64,000 bases of DNA. Source: Octopus bimaculoides. Taxonomy: Eukaryota. Positions 429-21,318 of this stretch are shown piece by piece. A program made the translations under genes and the position numbers. Position 1 is the first letter of the stretch. Every line of letters starts with the position of its first letter. The notes below the pieces were generated by a model that did not search any database, had not been told where the DNA came from, and worked only from the letters and a program-made list of their open reading frames with translations. The DNA is taken from the NCBI RefSeq assembly GCF_001194135.2, contig NC_068984.1, positions 23,831,778 through 23,895,777 of the forward strand. Direction: 5' to 3'.

Positions 429-873
429 NNNNNNNNNNNNNNNNNNNNNNNNNNNNNNNNNNNNNNNNNNNNNNNNNNNNNNNNNNNNNNNNNNNNNNNN
501 NNNNNNNNNNNNNNNNNNNNNNNNNNNNNNNNNNNNNNNNNNNNNNNNNNNNNNNNNNNNNNNNNNNNNNNNNNNNNNNNNNNNNNNNNNNNNNNNNNNN
601 NNNNNNNNNNNNNNNNNNNNNNNNNNNNNNNNNNNNNNNNNNNNNNNNNNNNNNNNNNNNNNNNNNNNNNNNNNNNNNNNNNNNNNNNNNNNNNNNNNNN
701 NNNNNNNNNNNNNNNNNNNNNNNNNNNNNNNNNNNNNNNNNNNNNNNNNNNNNNNNNNNNNNNNNNNNNNNNNNNNNNNNNNNNNNNNNNNNNNNNNNNN
801 NNNNNNNNNNNNNNNNNNNNNNNNNNNNNNNNNNNNNNNNNNNNNNNNNNNNNNNNNNNNNNNNNNNNNNNNN

Positions 874-7876: not shown

Positions 7877-8390
7877 TTCATGACACATTGTCGTAATAAT
7901 ATTTGAAGGACAAAAATATTAACAAGCCATTTTCTGGACACTTCTTTGAACTCTTAAAAATATTTAGAAAAGGCAAGAAAAAAAAACAATGATCAACAAA
8001 AAAGACGAAACAAAAAAAAATTCAATTATGAATACATAGAAATTTCACGTCGAATAAAAATTTCATCAACTCCAATAAAACAAGAATTTCCAATGAGGAC
8101 AATTATCGTTTTATTTCTACGATAAAGGTCATGTGACCTCATAACAAAAAAAGTCAAAGGCAAATCTGTATAATGTACAACGTGGCAACAAGTGATGTTT
8201 TATGAGTTTAGGTTTTTCCTGGTGTAGGAATCGTTTTTTTACTTTACATGGTTGTAAAGTTTTCATTTAGTTTATAATGTACAATTACATGAAATGTAAT
8301 ATATATATATCTATATCTATCTATATATATATATATATATACACATACACACACACATATATACATATGTGAATCTCATTGTTTTTTCTG

Positions 8391-8600: not shown

Positions 8601-9962
8601 TATCCAGTGGAAAAAAACAAACAAACCGTTGTCTGGTATAGCATATCTCAGTGCATTGTTAAATTTTGCAACAAAGGGGCGAATCTTATTAAAATAACAA
8701 GGGTTTTTTATTGGAGTTAGACCTCGCTGAGTGTATATTTTTACACGCGGGGATGTAAGGATGTATGTATGTATGCGTATGTGTGTAGTCTGCGTTTGTA
8801 TGTATGTATGCATGATGTATGTATGTATCCATGTATACATATATATGTACATGTTTNNNNNNNNNNATCTCAGTGCATTGTTAAATTTTGCAACAAAGGG
8901 GCGAATCTTATTAAAACAACAAGGGTTTTTTTATTGGAGTTAGACCTCGCTGAGTGTATATTTTTACACGCGGGGATGTAAGGATGTATGTATGTATGCG
9001 TATGTGTGTAGTCTGCGTTTGTATGTATGTATGCATGATGTATGTATGTATCCATGTANNNNNNNNNNNNNNNNNNNNNNNNNNNNNNNNNNNNNNNNNN
9101 NNNNNNNNNNNNNNNNNNNNNNNNNNNNNNNNNNNNNNNNNNNNNNNNNNNNNNNNNNNNNNNNNNNNNNNNNNNNNNNNNNNNNNNNNNNNNNNNNNNN
9201 NNNNNNNNNNNNNNNNNNNNNNNNNNNNNNNNNNNNNNNNNNNNNNNNNNNNNNNNNNNNNNNNNNNNNNNNNNNNNNNNNNNNNNNNNNNNNNNNNNNN
9301 NNNNNNNNNNNNNNNNNNNNNNNNNNNNNNNNNNNNNNNNNNNNNNNNNNNNNNNNNNNNNNNNNNNNNNNNNNNNNNNNNNNNNNNNNNNNNNNNNNNN
9401 NNNNNNNNNNNNNNNNNNNNNNNNNNNNNNNNNNNNNNNNNNNNNNNNNNNNNNNNNNNNNNNNNNNNNNNNNNNNNNNNNNNNNNNNNNNNNNNNNNNN
9501 NNNNNNNNNNNNNNNNNNNNNNNNNNNNNNNNNNNNNNNNNNNNNNNNNNNNNNNNNNNNNNNNNNNNNNNNNNNNNNNNNNNNNNNNNNNNNNNNNNNN
9601 NNNNNNNNNNNNNNNNNNNNNNNNNNNNNNNNNNNNNNNNNNNNNNNNNNNNNNNNNNNNNNNNNNNNNNNNNNNNNNNNNNNNNNNNNNNNNNNNNNNN
9701 NNNNNNNNNNNNNNNNNNNNNNNNNNNNNNNNNNNNNNNNNNNNNNNNNNNNNNNNNNNNNNNNNNNNNNNNNNNNNNNNNNNNNNNNNNNNNNNNNNNN
9801 NNNNNNNNNNNNNNNNNNNNNNNNNNNNNNNNNNNNNNNNNNNNNNNNNNNNNNNNNNNNNNNNNNNNNNNNNNNNNNNNNNNNNNNNNNNNNNNNNNNN
9901 NNNNNNNNNNTATATATATATATATACATACATATATATATATATACATACACATACACACA

Positions 9963-10014
<52 letters not shown>

Positions 10015-10581
10015 CACACGCTTACATACACATGCTTGCAGGTACGCATGCACACGTAGATAAGATATTCATGAATTCTTGCTTGAGTACGAATGTTCCT
10101 GAGAGAAAGTGTGTGCGTTTTGTGTGCATGTGCGTGTACATGCACGTGTGCATGTTTATTTGTGTTTGTGTTTGTGTATGTGTAAGGATGAAATATTTAT
10201 ATTATACTGAAAATGGCTACTAGCGACTGCCAGTTACACCGCTATAATTTCGGACATTGTTAATGATAAACCATGCAATATTTTGTGTAATGTAATGGCA
10301 GTTCTTGTCAGCGACACATGGAACATTCTTCTTCTCTTCCCACTATTCTCTTTTTTTGTTTCCTAAACAGGTCGAGGATTAAGATTTTGGCGAGAACCAT
10401 CATCGCTCTGTTGGGATCAAAGATTACAAGGCACCATGCATCAAATCGATATTAAGATGACATCATGCAACTGCAACTATTCACATTCGAAATAATTTCA
10501 TAATTCATCTTTTCGCGAACATCTCTGCCTCTTCACCGCCTCCACCATTATCTATTTTATCTCACTCATTCATTTCCTCTC

Positions 10582-10587
10582 TTTATT
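10582..10587 (-). promoter_or_regulatory. Candidate polyadenylation signal for the GPCR
   Basis: AATAAA on the minus strand about 290 nt past the stop; motif only, and common by chance in AT-rich DNA. Confidence 0.3.
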
Positions 10588-10879
10588 ATTTCTCTCCTCC
10601 CTTTCTCTCACACATCTTTCTTGTTCATCTCTCTTGCTAATTTCTCTGCTGATCTAAATACATTCCCCGTTCACAGAACGCTCACATCATCTCATTCCTT
10701 ATCAATCTCTCCTTTCCTTTCGTAGTCTGTCCGTCTCTCTACAATTATTTTCCATACTAAATACACGCACAAGCGCGCGCATACGTACGTACACACACAC
10801 ACACACACACACACACGCACTTTCCCTGTTGTAGATCTCATCGTCCATTCTCTCGCTAATGAAAGTCCCGTTGTTTAAA

Positions 10880-12028
10880 TCAGTTGGTCATTTCATATGT
10901 CTCTGCTCTAAGATGTCCGACCCCTCCGTTAATAGTCGGACTAGCTTCTATATCTTGCGGCAACGACTTACTATATCGATAACCAACGGCATTCGAATGC
11001 TCATTTTTGCAATTTCTGGCTTGACGCATAGAACGCCTCGTTTCAGATGGCGTTTGAAAACATGCTTTGCATAAAAAGAGATTGCCATAGGCATTACGTA
11101 TATCTCTATCAACAGTCCAGGCCAAAGGGTTAATGGCAAAACCACAGTGTGATATCCACATAAGGAGAGCATGTGCAACATCTAATTTATGCTTGTCACA
11201 CTCAATGTTTTCACAAACTACTTGGATTATATGTGGGCTGTAGATCCAGGGAAAGCGTAATATAAAAAAAAAGACATTCACTGAACACAAAGCCATTATT
11301 TTGTTTCGTATGGAATTACCATCAATGTCCTTCACTAATCCATACGATCGAATTCCTTGTGAGCGAGAAACTAGACAGAAAATGACTAAGAATATGACTA
11401 GGATTGCGGTGCCAATTATTGAGCACAAAGTGAAAATCGTTCGGATGACTTCTTGTTTGGGGATTAGAATACAAAGCGGTGCTTTTGGTGGTTTCAGAAA
11501 GCTAGTATCCTCTCCCAGTATGTAAAGGGGTGGAATGACAGAGCATCCCAGAATCCAAGGAGCTGCAGTTAAAATCACTGCCATGTTGACATTCAAATGT
11601 TTAGTATATTTCTCTGGGTTTGATACATACATTAGACGATCGATATTGACACATAAGAGGCACAGTGCAGAAACAACGAAGACTGTTGGTTCCAGTGTAG
11701 ACCAGATCTCGCACCATATTCGTGAGAGCTTCCATTCAGAAAATGCTTGGTATCCGTGAAATGGATTAATTAGAACACCTTGCAGGAGATCAATTGTGGC
11801 ATTGTTGGCAATTAGAATTTGTATTGTTGTTAATTTAGTTTTGGTGCATTGCAAGAGAATTGCTAGTAACAGCAAACCATTGAAAAGAACTACGCATCCA
11901 GCCAAGATGAATGACCCAACGGCTTCGGCTAAATTGACTGTAACTTCGGTTTCCTCTACTTGGTAATCGAGAGTCCAGTTGAAATCGATTGGTACATCCC
12001 AGTCAATCTCGAAGTAGTCTGGTCTCAT
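10880..12028 (-). CDS. Orphan rhodopsin-like (class A) GPCR, aminergic-like scaffold, single coding exon
   Basis: Intact 382-aa ORF with 7 hydrophobic segments. Landmarks: N-glycosylation site N17-W-T, N50 (1.50), D80 (2.50), WxLxxxWC ECL1 motif with C106 (3.25), D130-R131-L132, W158 (4.50) followed by PP, C186 in ECL2, P260 (6.50), ECL3 Cys pair, W291 (7.40), N300-P301, helix 8 (DIRNAY) followed by Cys residues. Confidence 0.95.
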   Translation of the reverse strand: MRPDYFEIDWDVPIDFNWTLDYQVEETEVTVNLAEAVGSFILAGCVVLFNGLLLLAILLQCTKTKLTTIQILIANNATIDLLQGVLINPFHGYQAFSEWKLSRIWCEIWSTLEPTVFVVSALCLLCVNIDRLMYVSNPEKYTKHLNVNMAVILTAAPWILGCSVIPPLYILGEDTSFLKPPKAPLCILIPKQEVIRTIFTLCSIIGTAILVIFLVIFCLVSRSQGIRSYGLVKDIDGNSIRNKIMALCSVNVFFFILRFPWIYSPHIIQVVCENIECDKHKLDVAHALLMWISHCGFAINPLAWTVDRDIRNAYGNLFLCKACFQTPSETRRSMRQARNCKNEHSNAVGYRYSKSLPQDIEASPTINGGVGHLRAETYEMTN

Positions 12029-12060
12029 CTGAAGAGAAAAAAAAGGATGTGTTACTTAAA
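12029..12060 (-). promoter_or_regulatory. 3' splice acceptor directly abutting the GPCR ATG
   Basis: Minus strand reads aagtaacacatccttttttttctcttcag|ATG: branch-like TAAC, polypyrimidine tract, then CAG immediately before the first codon. Confidence 0.75.
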
Positions 12061-12141
12061 CTTGTAAACCATGTTACATACATACATACAAACGTACATA
12101 CATATAAACATACATAAATACATATTTTTGTCAAAAATATT

Positions 12142-14133: not shown

Positions 14134-15008
14134 AGTACCATGTCATATGATGTCTATGTAGGATAACGTAACTAGTGCAGTCTAATTGTTCTTATTTTCT
14201 TACTTCAGTCTCTGAGAGATACACGTGTTAAACCTTTTAATATCATGTTTGACTATTCTTCTCAAGTTTCCTCCGAAGTTCCCACCTCACCACCTCTTTC
14301 AAAGCAACCGCTACTACAACACCTCAGCAGTAGTAGCAACAAGAATAACAACAACAACAACAAGAAATATAAAGGAAAAAGAAAAAAAACAACAAAGAGC
14401 ATTACTACAGCTGTCTCCACCACCACCGCCACCACCACTACCACAATGGTACCCAGCAGGCGTTTAGATCTAGGTCAGGATGGGAAGGTTCATCGACTGC
14501 TCTACCGAGTCCTAGTGACCCAGTGACCCAACTGTAGCCGGCGAATCAGCATCATCATCGCCAACCTCATCATCAGCATCATCATCGTCGTCGTCGTCAT
14601 CGTTTCGTCGTCAATATCGTAGTCACCATTGTAGTCGTCGTCGTTGTCATCATCATCATCGTCATCGTCATCATCATCACTCTCATCATCATTATCATTA
14701 TCATTAACATCTGAGTTTCTTTTGGGGTTTCTATGGTAACGGTAGTTTAATGAACTCTGTATGACCGCCGCCAACACTAATAATATTCCAGACTTCAATA
14801 ATAATAATTGTTTTTTCTTTCTTTCATTATTATTACTATTATTATTATTATCATGACGTTTGGTGTTTGTGCGGGAGAAGGAATAAGGAGGTTGTGGCGT
14901 TCTTGTCATTCCAAGAAGTACCAGTAGCCAAATTGAAGCAATGTGACATTTATCCTGATTTAATACCAGAGATCAAGAACTCTGTTTGTAAGAAGCTTAC
15001 TCTTTGGC

Positions 15009-19935: not shown

Positions 19936-21318
19936 CACACGCACACACACACATACATGGCAAGATTGAAAGACTGAAATAGAGCTGGCACAATTCGCAG
20001 AAAATTTCCAACATTATTTGCTATGACACAAGACAAAACAATAGTTATTATAAAAGAATTTTGATCCTTTATATTTTCAAGGTTACAAAGCTTCAGATTC
20101 TAAAACCAAAACAATATCACCACACACACACATATATCGGGGTTGTGTCGTTTGTATAATTCTCATTGGCAAGTGGGAATCGAAACTGGACTCACCAAGA
20201 GCTTGCCAGTATTTCAAGGCGAGAAGTAAGCGCAGAAATTCTATTCCTTATACCCCAGAGGCCTGTTCATAGAAAAGTTCAACTCAACGTTTTTTTATTT
20301 TTAATATATTAGAGCACGTTCCTGGTTTTGTTTTTGTATGAAATTTTATCTGACACACTCCTTTTCTGTTTATTTCTCAACCGCTCTATCATTTACTATA
20401 TTATACCATGTCATACGTACAATCAGTTAATCTCATCCATCGGTCTCGTTTTCACATTTGTTTTTTTTTGTTTCCTTTTTCTTTACTTCCCTACCCACCG
20501 TCGTCTCTCTTTTAGACCTATTTTCTTATATAAACATACAGACACTTGTGTGAGCAANNNNNNNNNNNNNNNNNNNNNNNNNNNNNNNNNNNNNNNNNNN
20601 NNNNNNNNNNNNNNNNNNNNNNNNNNNNNNNNNNNNNNNNNNNNNNNNNNNNNNNNNNNNNNNNNNNNNNNNNNNNNNNNNNNNNNNNNNNNNNNNNNNN
20701 NNNNNNNNNNNNNNNNNNNNNNNNNNNNNNNNNNNNNNNNNNNNNNNNNNNNNNNNNNNNNNNNNNNNNNNNNNNNNNNNNNNNNNNNNNNNNNNNNNNN
20801 NNNNNNNNNNNNNNNNNNNNNNNNNNNNNNNNNNNNNNNNNNNNNNNNNNNNNNNNNNNNNNNNNNNNNNNNNNNNNNNNNNNNNNNNNNNNNNNNNNNN
20901 NNNNNNNNNNNNNNNNNNNNNNNNNNNNNNNNNNNNNNNNNNNNNNNNNNNNNNNNNNNNNNNNNNNNNNNNNNNNNNNNNNNNNNNNNNNTATATATAT
21001 ATATATATATATATATTGTATATGTGTGCTTGAGTATGTGCGTGCGCGTGTGTAAGTGTAAGCGCGTGTTTCTCAATGTGTACGTGTCATGTATGTTATG
21101 GATATCAGCATGTATACGTTTGTGTACGTAATGCTATGTGCGCACAGTTGTAAACTATTCACAAGGCCGTGTGCGTATGTTTGGCTTTGTAATTTTACAC
21201 ACAGATACATATATCTCTGCATAATAGTCACCCACTTACTGTTGGTCTCATTAAAATTTATCGCTGAGTGGTAAATTCTTTCATTTCTTTCTTTTTCTGT
21301 TTTAATGCGTGCTCGTAT

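What the first reader, a model, noticed from the sequence alone, without database searches (positions are those of the whole stretch)
10880..12028. Aminergic-like GPCR with a rewired pocket (E3.32, R6.48, H7.43) and lost activation switches
Seen by counting from C106 (3.25), R131 (3.50), P260 (6.50) and P301 (7.50): E113 at 3.32 followed by P, DRL instead of DRY, no Pro or Tyr anywhere in TM5 (residues 194-221), LRFP instead of CWxP (R258 at 6.48), W291/H294 at 7.40/7.43, G/F at 7.45/7.46, and NPLAW instead of NPxxY. Established: aminergic receptors use D3.32-Y7.43-W7.40 for amine binding and W6.48, P5.50, Y5.58 and Y7.53 for activation. Inference: the ORF is intact and the changes cluster at functional positions, suggesting a different ligand (possibly an internal E3.32-R6.48 salt bridge, or a zwitterionic or acidic ligand) or non-canonical, G-protein-poor signalling rather than decay.
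Basis: partly seen in the sequence, partly recalled or inferred. Interest (0 to 1): 0.72.

Follow-up and report, generated by a model that had tools for sequence, protein, structure and literature searches.

The report
Conserved cephalopod orphan receptor, rewired pocket
This is an intact, expressed and strongly conserved octopus/cuttlefish receptor gene that looks like a monoamine receptor but has swapped the residues that normally bind the amine and trigger activation, so it most likely senses something other than a classical monoamine; its ligand is unknown.

Summary
An alignment with 135 nearest relatives confirms the numbering: E113=3.32, R258=6.48, P260=6.50, H294=7.43, W304=7.53.

It is not decaying. 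Intact single-ORF orthologues exist in three other octopods and several decapods. All odd residues are invariant except 3.50 in Argonauta. dN/dS is 0.04-0.16. Cuttlefish RNA-seq contigs show a spliced 5'UTR.

DRL, no Tyr5.58 and NPxxW are shared by a clade of short, uncharacterised lophotrochozoan aminergic-like receptors.

These changes are unique to the cephalopod gene:
- E3.32-P3.33
- loss of P5.50
- L-R at 6.47-6.48
- H7.43
- G/F at 7.45/7.46

No relative has E3.32 or a basic 6.48 (0/135).

The extracellular loops and pocket are the best-conserved parts, which suggests a specific conserved ligand.

The E3.32-R6.48 salt bridge, the ligand and the coupling remain untested. NCBI already annotates the gene automatically as "histamine H2 receptor-like". 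It is a new variant of a known kind, of moderate interest.

The parts
10880..12028 (-). Complete coding exon of the receptor: ATG at 12026-12028, stop TAA at 10880-10882, 382 aa.
   Evidence: Pfam 7tm_1 E 5e-19. The protein is identical to database protein P0001.
12029..12050 (-). Polypyrimidine tract plus AG splice acceptor directly in front of the ATG (ACATCCTTTTTTTTCTCTTCAG|ATG). The 5'UTR exon(s) lie further upstream and were not located.
   Evidence: The same ...Py-tract-AG|ATG is present in O. sinensis, Argonauta, S. pharaonis and a second decapod. Sepia RNA contigs L001-L010 and L020 carry a different 5'UTR joined exactly at this point. Octopus-Argonauta DNA similarity stops at 12044.
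11687..11692 (-). E113-P114 = positions 3.32-3.33. The amine-anchoring Asp is replaced by Glu and followed by Pro.
   Evidence: D in 128/135 relatives and E in 0/135. Invariant in 9 orthologues. Codons GAA/GAG.
11633..11641 (-). D130-R131-L132 (3.49-3.51), DRL instead of DRY.
   Evidence: L/F/V at 3.51 is common in the NPxxW clade. Argonauta has H at 3.50 (CAT vs CGT).
11456..11518 (-). Extracellular loop 2 (LGEDTSFLKPPKAPLCILIPK), including C186, the disulfide partner of C106.
   Evidence: 95-100% identical between octopus and decapods, the best-conserved region together with ECL1. C186 aligns with an invariant Cys in 135/135 relatives.
11366..11449 (-). TM5 (residues 194-221) without Pro or Tyr. 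I205 is at 5.50, F213 at 5.58 and R196 at about 5.39. The alignment places a 2-residue gap just before 5.49.
   Evidence: AF2 models it as one continuous helix, 192-222.
11249..11260 (-). L257-R258-F259-P260 = 6.47-6.50, LRFP in place of CWxP. Arg occupies the toggle-switch position.
   Evidence: W in 121/135 relatives and R/K in 0/135. Codons CGC/CGT/CGA across species.
11138..11158 (-). W291-I-S-H294-C-G296-F297 = 7.40-7.46. W7.40 is kept, Y7.43 is replaced by H, and N7.45/S7.46 (sodium-pocket residues) are replaced by G/F.
11117..11131 (-). N300-P-L-A-W304 = NPxxW in place of NPxxY.
   Evidence: W at 7.53 in 19/135 relatives, which define the clade the gene belongs to.
10883..10897 (-). C-terminal YEMTN, conserved in all orthologues although the rest of the tail is only about 35% identical between octopods and decapods.

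Best explanation
The ORF encodes a functional, single-copy orphan class A receptor, found here in octopods and in Sepia-like decapods. It is a highly derived member of a lophotrochozoan clade of short aminergic-like receptors that use DR[L/F], a non-Tyr 5.58 and NPxxW instead of DRY, Y5.58 and NPxxY.

Shown:
- The gene is intact, spliced and transcribed in cuttlefish larvae, and under strong purifying selection.
- Its fold and nearest relatives are aminergic.
- Its orthosteric-pocket and extracellular-loop residues are the most constrained parts.

Inferred:
- The pocket has been rebuilt for a conserved, probably endogenous, ligand that is not a classical monoamine. It is unusually ionisable: E3.26, E3.32, R~5.39, R6.48 and His at 2.61, 6.56, 7.35 and 7.43. 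This would suit a zwitterionic, acidic or otherwise polar ligand.
- In the unliganded state the Arg at 6.48 (one nucleotide step from the ancestral Trp, TGG to CGG) most likely pairs with E3.32, or with D2.50 just below it. N7.45/S7.46 to G/F has remodelled the sodium pocket there.
- Breaking or rearranging that ion pair on ligand binding would take over the role of the Trp toggle.
- Downstream coupling probably follows whatever the NPxxW clade as a whole uses, so it need not be G-protein-poor.
For: - Intact ORFs of 382-388 aa in O. bimaculoides (window), O. sinensis, a third Octopus, Argonauta, S. esculenta-type, S. pharaonis and a further decapod.
- dN/dS 0.11 (Octopus-Argonauta, dS 0.77), 0.04 (Sepia vs second decapod, dS 0.8) and 0.05-0.16 within genera.
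- Synonymous turnover with the amino acid kept at R6.48, R196, E3.32, P3.33, L6.47 and G7.45.
- Spliced 5'UTR in Sepia RNA contigs. One of these runs, SRR23936181, is listed as S. esculenta larval RNA-seq in PMC10571815.
- ECL1 is 100%, ECL2 95-100% and ECL3 83% identical between octopus and decapods, against about 35% for the C-tail. Nearly all pocket positions tested are invariant; 3.40, 7.36 and 7.39 vary.
- 0/135 relatives have E3.32 or a basic 6.48.
- NJ places the gene with NPxxW-type sequences in 33/40 bootstraps.
- The AF2 model has pLDDT 81 and pTM 0.81 with a 7TM core above 90. Nearest solved folds are beta1/beta2/D2/alpha1A receptors.
Against: - No ligand, coupling or localisation data exist.
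- The E3.32-R6.48 (or D2.50-R6.48) pairing is inferred from general knowledge of class A geometry. It was not measured, because the structure tool returns no coordinates.
- Glu keeps the negative charge of Asp, and W7.40, W3.28, F6.44 and an aromatic 6.51 are retained, so an amine ligand is not excluded.
- Argonauta has His at 3.50, which may mean canonical G-protein engagement is dispensable, at least in that lineage.
- The NJ placement rests on a long branch with moderate support.
- Expression evidence comes from cuttlefish. No octopus transcript was seen.
Confidence: 0.5

Rival explanations
1. It is still a monoamine (or trace-amine/polyamine) receptor. Glu3.32 serves as the counter-ion in a slightly deeper or shifted pocket, and the other changes tune selectivity.
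For: - E keeps the charge of D.
- W7.40, W3.28, C3.25-C45.50, an ECL3 Cys pair, F6.44, an aromatic 6.51, and S203/T200 at 5.46/5.43 in the alignment are retained.
- All best sequence and fold matches are aminergic.
Against: - A conserved Arg at 6.48 inside the pocket should repel or compete with a cationic amine for E3.32.
- Y7.43, which caps the D3.32-amine interaction, is His.
- P3.33 and the loss of P5.50 reshape TM3 and TM5.
- No relative among 135 combines these changes.
Confidence: 0.2
2. It is a ligand-independent receptor. The E3.32-R6.48 pair acts as a built-in pseudo-ligand that locks the receptor constitutively on or off, and the protein works as a constitutive signaller, decoy or partner of another receptor.
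For: - Toggle Trp, P5.50, Y5.58, Y7.53 and Y3.51 are all absent.
- Argonauta even lacks R3.50.
- Charge-compensating residues face the same pocket (inference).
Against: - Extracellular loops and the pocket entrance are the most conserved regions, with ECL2 95-100% identical. This is hard to explain without an extracellular partner or ligand.
- Three of the 'missing' switches are clade-wide traits in receptors with normal pockets.
Confidence: 0.13
3. It is a chemosensory receptor for external cues, analogous to vertebrate TAARs that evolved from amine receptors.
For: - Weak Pfam hit to nematode Srsx chemoreceptors, E 9e-7.
- Members of the NPxxW clade vary at 3.32, 6.48 and 7.43: K/Q/S, H/W/Q and D/Q/S.
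- TAARs show that the amine motif can be rewired (PMC8890504).
Against: - The gene is single copy with 1:1 orthologues, and no paralogue lies in 64 kb.
- The extracellular half is nearly invariant. Lophotrochozoan chemosensory expansions show the opposite pattern, with the highest entropy in the extracellular segments (PMC11886862).
- It was assembled from whole-larva RNA-seq, not shown in sensory tissue.
Confidence: 0.1
4. It is a proton or metal-ion sensor that uses the conserved cluster of His and Glu in the extracellular half.
For: H91 (2.61), H266 (6.56), H286 (7.35) and H294 (7.43), plus E107 and E113, are invariant in all nine orthologues; H280 (ECL3) is conserved in the aligned orthologues.
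Against: Purely compositional. Overall His content is ordinary, and no similarity to GPR4/65/68 or GPR39 was seen in any search.
Confidence: 0.05
5. It is a drifting or pseudogenised copy, or an assembly artefact.
For: Many canonical motifs are missing. The window is a gapped draft assembly with 19 N-runs.
Against: - dN/dS is 0.04-0.16.
- Identical unusual residues occur in independent assemblies of at least 7 taxa.
- Spliced transcripts exist.
Confidence: 0.02

Closest known systems
Biogenic-amine (aminergic) class A GPCRs, e.g. histamine H2, 5-HT2B/2C, dopamine D2, beta1/beta2 adrenergic receptors
   Same: - Best sequence matches (E 1e-14 to 1e-15) and best fold matches (target-normalised TM-score about 0.8).
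- Shares N1.50, D2.50, W3.28, the C3.25-ECL2 disulfide, an ECL3 Cys pair, D3.49-R3.50, W4.50, F6.44, P6.50, W7.40, N7.49-P7.50 and helix 8 with Cys.
   Different: - E instead of D at 3.32, P at 3.33 and F at 3.36.
- No P5.50 or Y5.58.
- L-R instead of C-W at 6.47-6.48, and H instead of Y at 7.43.
- G/F instead of N/S at 7.45/7.46.
- DRL and NPxxW.
- Only about 20-25% identity. No orthology to H2R despite the NCBI name.
Uncharacterised lophotrochozoan 'NPxxW' aminergic-like receptors (e.g. Owenia CAH1797106.1, Liolophura XP_064608801.1, Octopus XP_014785749.1, Batillaria KAG5705967.1, Nucella KAL8592031.1)
   Same: - Short (320-440 aa) with a short ICL3.
- DR[L/F/V], non-Tyr 5.58 and, in most members, NPxxW.
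- The nearest non-orthologous hits (E 2e-19 to 1e-12) and the NJ sister group in 33/40 bootstraps.
   Different: - Most members keep D3.32, M-W at 6.47-6.48, P5.50, Y7.43, N7.45 and S7.46; the cephalopod gene has changed all of these.
- It is at most 30% identical to any of them.
- None is functionally characterised, so the clade gives no ligand.
Trace amine-associated receptors (TAARs) and TAAR-like receptors
   Same: A precedent for amine-receptor descendants that rewire the recognition motif. Clade III TAARs lose D3.32 and use D5.42, and some detect non-amines such as indole (PMC8890504).
   Different: - TAARs are vertebrate, multi-copy and fast-evolving. This gene is single-copy and highly constrained.
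- No specific sequence relationship: one TAAR appears among the PDB hits at E 1e-11, no better than other amine receptors.

Membership tests
Class A (rhodopsin-like) GPCR, Pfam PF00001 | Significant match to the 7tm_1 profile over seven helices | tested here: met
   E 5.3e-19, 69 bits against a cut-off of 30.5, residues 50-302. AF2 models seven TM helices plus helix 8, pLDDT above 90 in the core.
Class A (rhodopsin-like) GPCR, Pfam PF00001 | Reference residues N1.50, D2.50, R3.50, W4.50, P5.50, P6.50, P7.50 | tested here: inconclusive
   N50, D80, R131, W158, P260 and P301 are present. P5.50 is absent (I205). Six of seven is enough for the superfamily, but TM5 is atypical.
Aminergic receptors | Asp at 3.32 as the amine counter-ion | tested here: not met
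   Glu113. D in 128/135 relatives and E in none.
Aminergic receptors | W7.40 and Y7.43 flanking D3.32 | tested here: not met
   W291 is present, but 7.43 is His294; Y in 110/135 relatives.
Aminergic receptors | Aromatic cluster CWxP-F6.51-F6.52 with W6.48 | tested here: not met
   L257-R258-F259-P260-W261-I262.
Aminergic receptors | Closest overall sequence and fold similarity is to amine receptors | tested here: met
   PDB sequence hits are H2, 5-HT2, D2, alpha2 and beta2. Foldseek hits are beta1/beta2/D2/alpha1A.
Aminergic receptors | Activated by a biogenic amine | not testable with these tools
   Needs a heterologous assay.
Histamine H2 receptor (the name NCBI gives the orthologues) | Orthology to H2R and its histamine-binding residues (D3.32, D5.42, T5.46; from general knowledge) | tested here: not met
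   E at 3.32, F199 at the aligned 5.42 and S203 at 5.46. The similarity to H2R is only a weak match (E about 1e-14 to 1e-15; per-residue identity to H2R was not computed, related PDB aminergic receptors are 17-23% identical), no better in kind than to 5-HT2 or D2. The name is a best-hit label.
Lophotrochozoan NPxxW aminergic-like clade (defined here, not a curated family) | DR[L/F/V] at 3.49-3.51, non-Tyr 5.58, W at 7.53, short ICL3, length 320-440 aa | tested here: met
   DRL, F213, W304, ICL3 of about 16-20 residues, 382 aa.
Lophotrochozoan NPxxW aminergic-like clade (defined here, not a curated family) | Phylogenetic grouping with the clade | tested here: inconclusive
   NJ with Kimura distances on 53 sequences. 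The sister group is at least 80% NPxxW sequences in 33/40 bootstraps. The branch is long (distance about 2) and no likelihood tree was made.

The most novel reading that the evidence does not exclude
A class A receptor in which the Trp6.48 toggle has been replaced by a buried Arg. The Arg forms a switchable ion pair with Glu3.32 (or with Asp2.50, standing in for the sodium ion). Together with the loss of P5.50, Y5.58 and Y7.53, this would be a distinct charge-based activation mechanism, kept since the octopod-decapod split and tuned to a non-amine (zwitterionic or acidic) transmitter specific to cephalopod nervous systems.
Probability: 0.2. Interest if true: 0.75.

Novelty: new variant of a known kind. 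Interest (0 to 1): 0.5.

Why it matters
If the Arg6.48/Glu3.32 pair is functional, this receptor would be a natural experiment. It would show how the most conserved activation switch of class A GPCRs can be replaced by a charge pair while the protein stays under strong constraint. The receptor would also mark an unidentified signalling molecule in coleoid cephalopods, whose neurochemistry is of wide interest.

More modestly, the work shows three things:
- The automated name "histamine H2 receptor-like" is misleading.
- DRL/NPxxW is a clade trait of a group of uncharacterised lophotrochozoan receptors rather than a sign of decay.
- Two deposited decapod gene models are wrong.

Tried and rejected
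- AF2 with only the three orthologues gave a useless model (pLDDT 33). The 106-sequence alignment fixed this. Neither run returns coordinates, so the E113-R258 distance could not be measured (one search confirmed that no model file is exposed).
- The first dN/dS script timed out on the ML method. NG86 was used instead. Octopod-decapod dS is saturated, so only within-order pairs are quoted.
- The first NJ tree was invalid because of NaN distances. The first bootstrap run timed out. The analysis was redone on 53 sequences.
- Literature searches for 'NPxxW' found 0 papers. 'R6.48' found only FlyBase release numbers. 'E3.32' returned noise. Searches for cephalopod aminergic/orphan receptors and for 'histamine H2 receptor' with cephalopods found nothing about this gene. 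The two GPCR-repertoire papers do not discuss it.
- NCBIfam gave no hit, as expected for a prokaryote-oriented library.
- The Sepia 5'UTR has no recognisable counterpart in the window, so the octopus 5' exon was not located.
- Other ORFs of at least 120 aa in the window are N-run artefacts or have no Pfam match above the curated cut-off; one has only weak sub-threshold hits. No tandem paralogue was found.
- The alternative numbering with P265 = 6.50 and Y263 = 6.48 (from the pairwise alignment) was considered and rejected.
- The exhaustive representative search had already shown nothing between 69% and 30% identity.
Full report
**Observation**

The interval 10880-12028 is full of stops on the + strand. 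On the minus strand it is a clean ORF, from ATG at 12026-12028 to TAA at 10880-10882, encoding 382 aa.
- C106, E113-P114 and D130-R131-L132
- a TM5 stretch (194-221) with no Pro or Tyr
- L257-R258-F259-P260
- W291, H294, G296, F297
- N300-P-L-A-W304

The protein matches Pfam 7tm_1 at E 5e-19. Its best solved relatives are histamine H2, 5-HT2B/2C, D2, alpha2 and beta2 receptors, at E 1e-14 to 1e-10.

**Numbering**

The claims depend on Ballesteros-Weinstein positions, so I aligned the protein and three orthologues with the 135 nearest full-length representatives from an exhaustive HMMER scan of 1.84 billion cluster representatives. The columns are unambiguous:

| Residue | Position | Most common residue among 135 relatives |
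|---|---|---|
| E113 | 3.32 | D in 128 |
| P114 | 3.33 | V in 107 |
| L132 | 3.51 | Y 89, F 26, L 14 |
| I205 | 5.50 | P in 129 |
| F213 | 5.58 | Y in 104 |
| L257 | 6.47 | C in 99 |
| R258 | 6.48 | W in 121 |
| P260 | 6.50 | P in 124 |
| W291 | 7.40 | W in 122 |
| H294 | 7.43 | Y in 110 |
| G296 | 7.45 | N in 114 |
| F297 | 7.46 | S in 116 |
| W304 | 7.53 | Y 103, W 19 |

One pairwise phmmer alignment to H2R had instead put P265 at 6.50. A profile of the orthologues aligns LRFPW to H2R's CWFPY and places a 5-residue insertion after 6.51. None of the 135 relatives has Glu at 3.32 or a basic residue at 6.48.

**Not decay**

A word-indexed search of 5.8 billion proteins found only four 90%-identity clusters:
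- the window's own protein, which shares its cluster with O. sinensis XP_029635318.1 ("histamine H2 receptor-like") and a third Octopus sequence
- Argonauta hians GAB1597736.1 (84% identical)
- a Sepia-type cluster (69% identical, seen on 64 contigs)
- S. pharaonis CAE1162057.1

I fetched the DNA of each. The S. pharaonis genome and an ENA decapod contig both carry intact single ORFs of 386 and 388 aa ending in YEMTN. The deposited models (P0004, P0011) are mis-spliced.

Pairwise Nei-Gojobori dN/dS values:
- 0.11 for Octopus vs Argonauta (dS 0.77)
- 0.04 for Sepia vs the second decapod (dS 0.8)
- 0.05-0.16 within genera
- octopod-decapod dS is saturated, while proteins remain about 70% identical

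All nine sequences are identical at E3.26, E3.32, P3.33, F3.36, R196, R6.48, W6.51, P6.55, H6.56, H7.35, W7.40, H7.43, G7.45 and F7.46; W7.53 is likewise conserved in all orthologues examined. Several of these codons differ synonymously between lineages: R6.48 is CGC/CGT/CGA, R196 is CGA/CGG/AGA and E3.32 is GAA/GAG. So selection acts on the amino acids themselves.

The only exception is Argonauta's His at 3.50, CAT against CGT.

**Gene structure and expression**

In every genome a polypyrimidine tract and AG lie directly before the ATG; in the window this is 12029-12050...CCTTTTTTTTCTCTTCAG|ATG.

Sepia contigs L001-L010 and L020 replace the intronic sequence with a different 5'UTR joined exactly at that AG. 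Contigs L017 and L019 are colinear with the genome. The former are therefore spliced mRNAs.

One of those runs, SRR23936181, is listed as Sepia esculenta larval RNA-seq (PRJNA947123) in PMC10571815.

Octopus-Argonauta nucleotide similarity ends at 12044, which fits an intron there. No octopus transcript was available. The 5' exon was not found in the window.

**What family it belongs to**

After the orthologues, similarity drops abruptly to no more than 30% identity (E 2e-19 and weaker).

The nearest hits are short (320-440 aa) receptors from molluscs and an annelid. Named examples are from Owenia, Liolophura, Batillaria, Nucella and an Octopus paralogue. They share DR[L/F/V] and a non-Tyr 5.58; most also share M6.47 and NPxxW. 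Most of them keep D3.32, W6.48, P5.50, Y7.43, N7.45 and S7.46.

In an NJ analysis the cephalopod gene is monophyletic. Its sister group is at least 80% NPxxW-type sequences in 33 of 40 bootstraps.

They are not evidence that this gene in particular has abandoned G-protein signalling.

The cephalopod lineage added E3.32-P3.33, the loss of P5.50 (with a 2-residue alignment gap in TM5), L-R at 6.47-6.48, H7.43 and G/F at 7.45/7.46. D to E, W(TGG) to R(CGG) and Y to H are each single-nucleotide steps (inference).

**Structure**

With a 106-sequence alignment AlphaFold2 gives pLDDT 81 and pTM 0.81, with the 7TM core above 90. TM5 (192-222) and TM6 (237-274) are modelled as continuous helices, and helix 8 is present.

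Foldseek against the PDB returns beta1/beta2 adrenergic, D2, D4 and alpha1A receptors, with target-normalised TM-score 0.76-0.84. RMSD is lower to antagonist-bound or inactive-type structures (3.3-3.8 A) than to Gs complexes (4.5-5 A).

The tools do not expose coordinates. The key distance, R258 to E113 or D80, could not be measured.

**Where constraint lies**

Between octopus and decapods, identity by region is as follows:

| Region | Identity |
|---|---|
| ECL1 | 100% |
| ECL2 | 95-100% |
| ECL3 | 83% |
| TM5 | 87% |
| TM6 | 75-81% |
| TM4 | about 50% |
| ICL2 | about 60% |
| C-tail (except the terminal YEMTN) | about 35% |

This is the opposite of the pattern reported for lophotrochozoan chemosensory expansions, where extracellular segments are the most variable (PMC11886862). 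It argues for a specific conserved ligand or extracellular partner. It argues against a ligand-independent scaffold or a fast-evolving chemoreceptor.

The gene is also isolated. No paralogue or other recognisable coding ORF lies in the 64-kb window.

**Mechanism (inferred)**

The pocket is unusually ionisable, with two Glu, two Arg and four His. In class A receptors 3.32 and 6.48 line the same cavity, about one helical turn apart on facing helices, and D2.50 lies just beneath 6.48 in the sodium pocket (general knowledge).

An Arg at 6.48 can plausibly reach either acid. The simultaneous N7.45G/S7.46F change remodels exactly that sodium pocket.

I therefore favour a receptor in which an internal Arg-carboxylate pair replaces the Trp toggle and is rearranged by a non-amine (zwitterionic or acidic) ligand. 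I give this modest confidence.

Rivals considered:
- an amine receptor using Glu3.32
- a self-locked ligand-independent receptor
- a TAAR-like chemoreceptor
- a proton or metal sensor
- decay, which is refuted

**Novelty**

The gene is already in databases under an automated, misleading name. No paper in the searchable library discusses it or a GPCR with Arg6.48.

It is a new variant of a known kind: a strongly conserved, aminergic-derived orphan with an unprecedented pocket, as far as these data show. Interest is moderate. It is a good deorphanisation and structure target, but it is one orphan among many divergent invertebrate GPCRs, and the mechanistic claim is untested.

Noticed in passing
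L021:4956-6116 (S. pharaonis genome) and L013:2283-3449 (ENA decapod contig): The deposited protein models for these loci are mis-spliced. CAE1162057.1 (P0004) is 375 aa spread over 7 kb. P0011 is 426 aa. In both cases the genome carries an intact single ORF of 386/388 aa ending in YEMTN.
   Followed up: yes
L011:10391-10393 (Argonauta hians, codon 132, aligned with window codon 131 at 11636-11638): Argonauta has CAT (His) where all other species have CGT/CGC (Arg3.50). Coleoids recode heavily by A-to-I editing, so CAU to CIU would read as Arg. The DRL motif might be restored at the RNA level. This is pure speculation; no Argonauta RNA was available.
   Followed up: no
window 8079-8329: A single-copy 251-nt non-coding block, 2.5 kb downstream of the stop codon. 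It is conserved in O. sinensis (95%, L012:13404-13655) and Argonauta (76%, L011:15126-15370) but absent from the decapod loci. It may be distal 3'UTR or a regulatory element of the receptor gene.
   Followed up: partly
window 10883-10897 (protein residues 378-382): The C-terminal pentapeptide YEMTN is invariant from octopus to cuttlefish although the rest of the tail is only about 35% identical. It may be a trafficking or scaffold-binding motif. It is not a classical PDZ class I ligand.
   Followed up: no
window 429-873, 9059-9910, 20558-20991, 39598-40547, 49659-50539, 55120-56068 and 13 further runs: The window contains 19 runs of N (10-950 nt). Most long 'ORFs' listed mechanically (e.g. 8870-10223, 39171-40799) are translations across these gaps and are not genes. 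The local GC dips in the composition profile are the same artefact.
   Followed up: yes
window 14502-14909 (-): A 135-aa ORF made of a degenerate TCA/CAT triplet repeat (TRF arrays at 14546-14711), with only sub-threshold Pfam hits (FAM176, Cwf15). Most likely low-complexity sequence, not a gene.
   Followed up: partly
window 10582-10587 and 10155-10160 (-): Two AATAAA hexamers lie about 295 and 720 nt downstream of the stop codon. They are candidate polyadenylation signals for the receptor mRNA. (AC)n at 10791-10820 and (TACA)n at 12075-12124 flank the exon.
   Followed up: no
proteins P0017, P0013, P0023/P0026/P0047 (relatives, not in the window): Other members of the NPxxW clade also vary the pocket triad: K3.32/Q6.48/S7.43, H3.32/W6.48/Q7.43 and D3.32/Q6.48/S-or-V7.43. 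The whole clade may be exploring non-amine ligands. None is characterised.
   Followed up: partly
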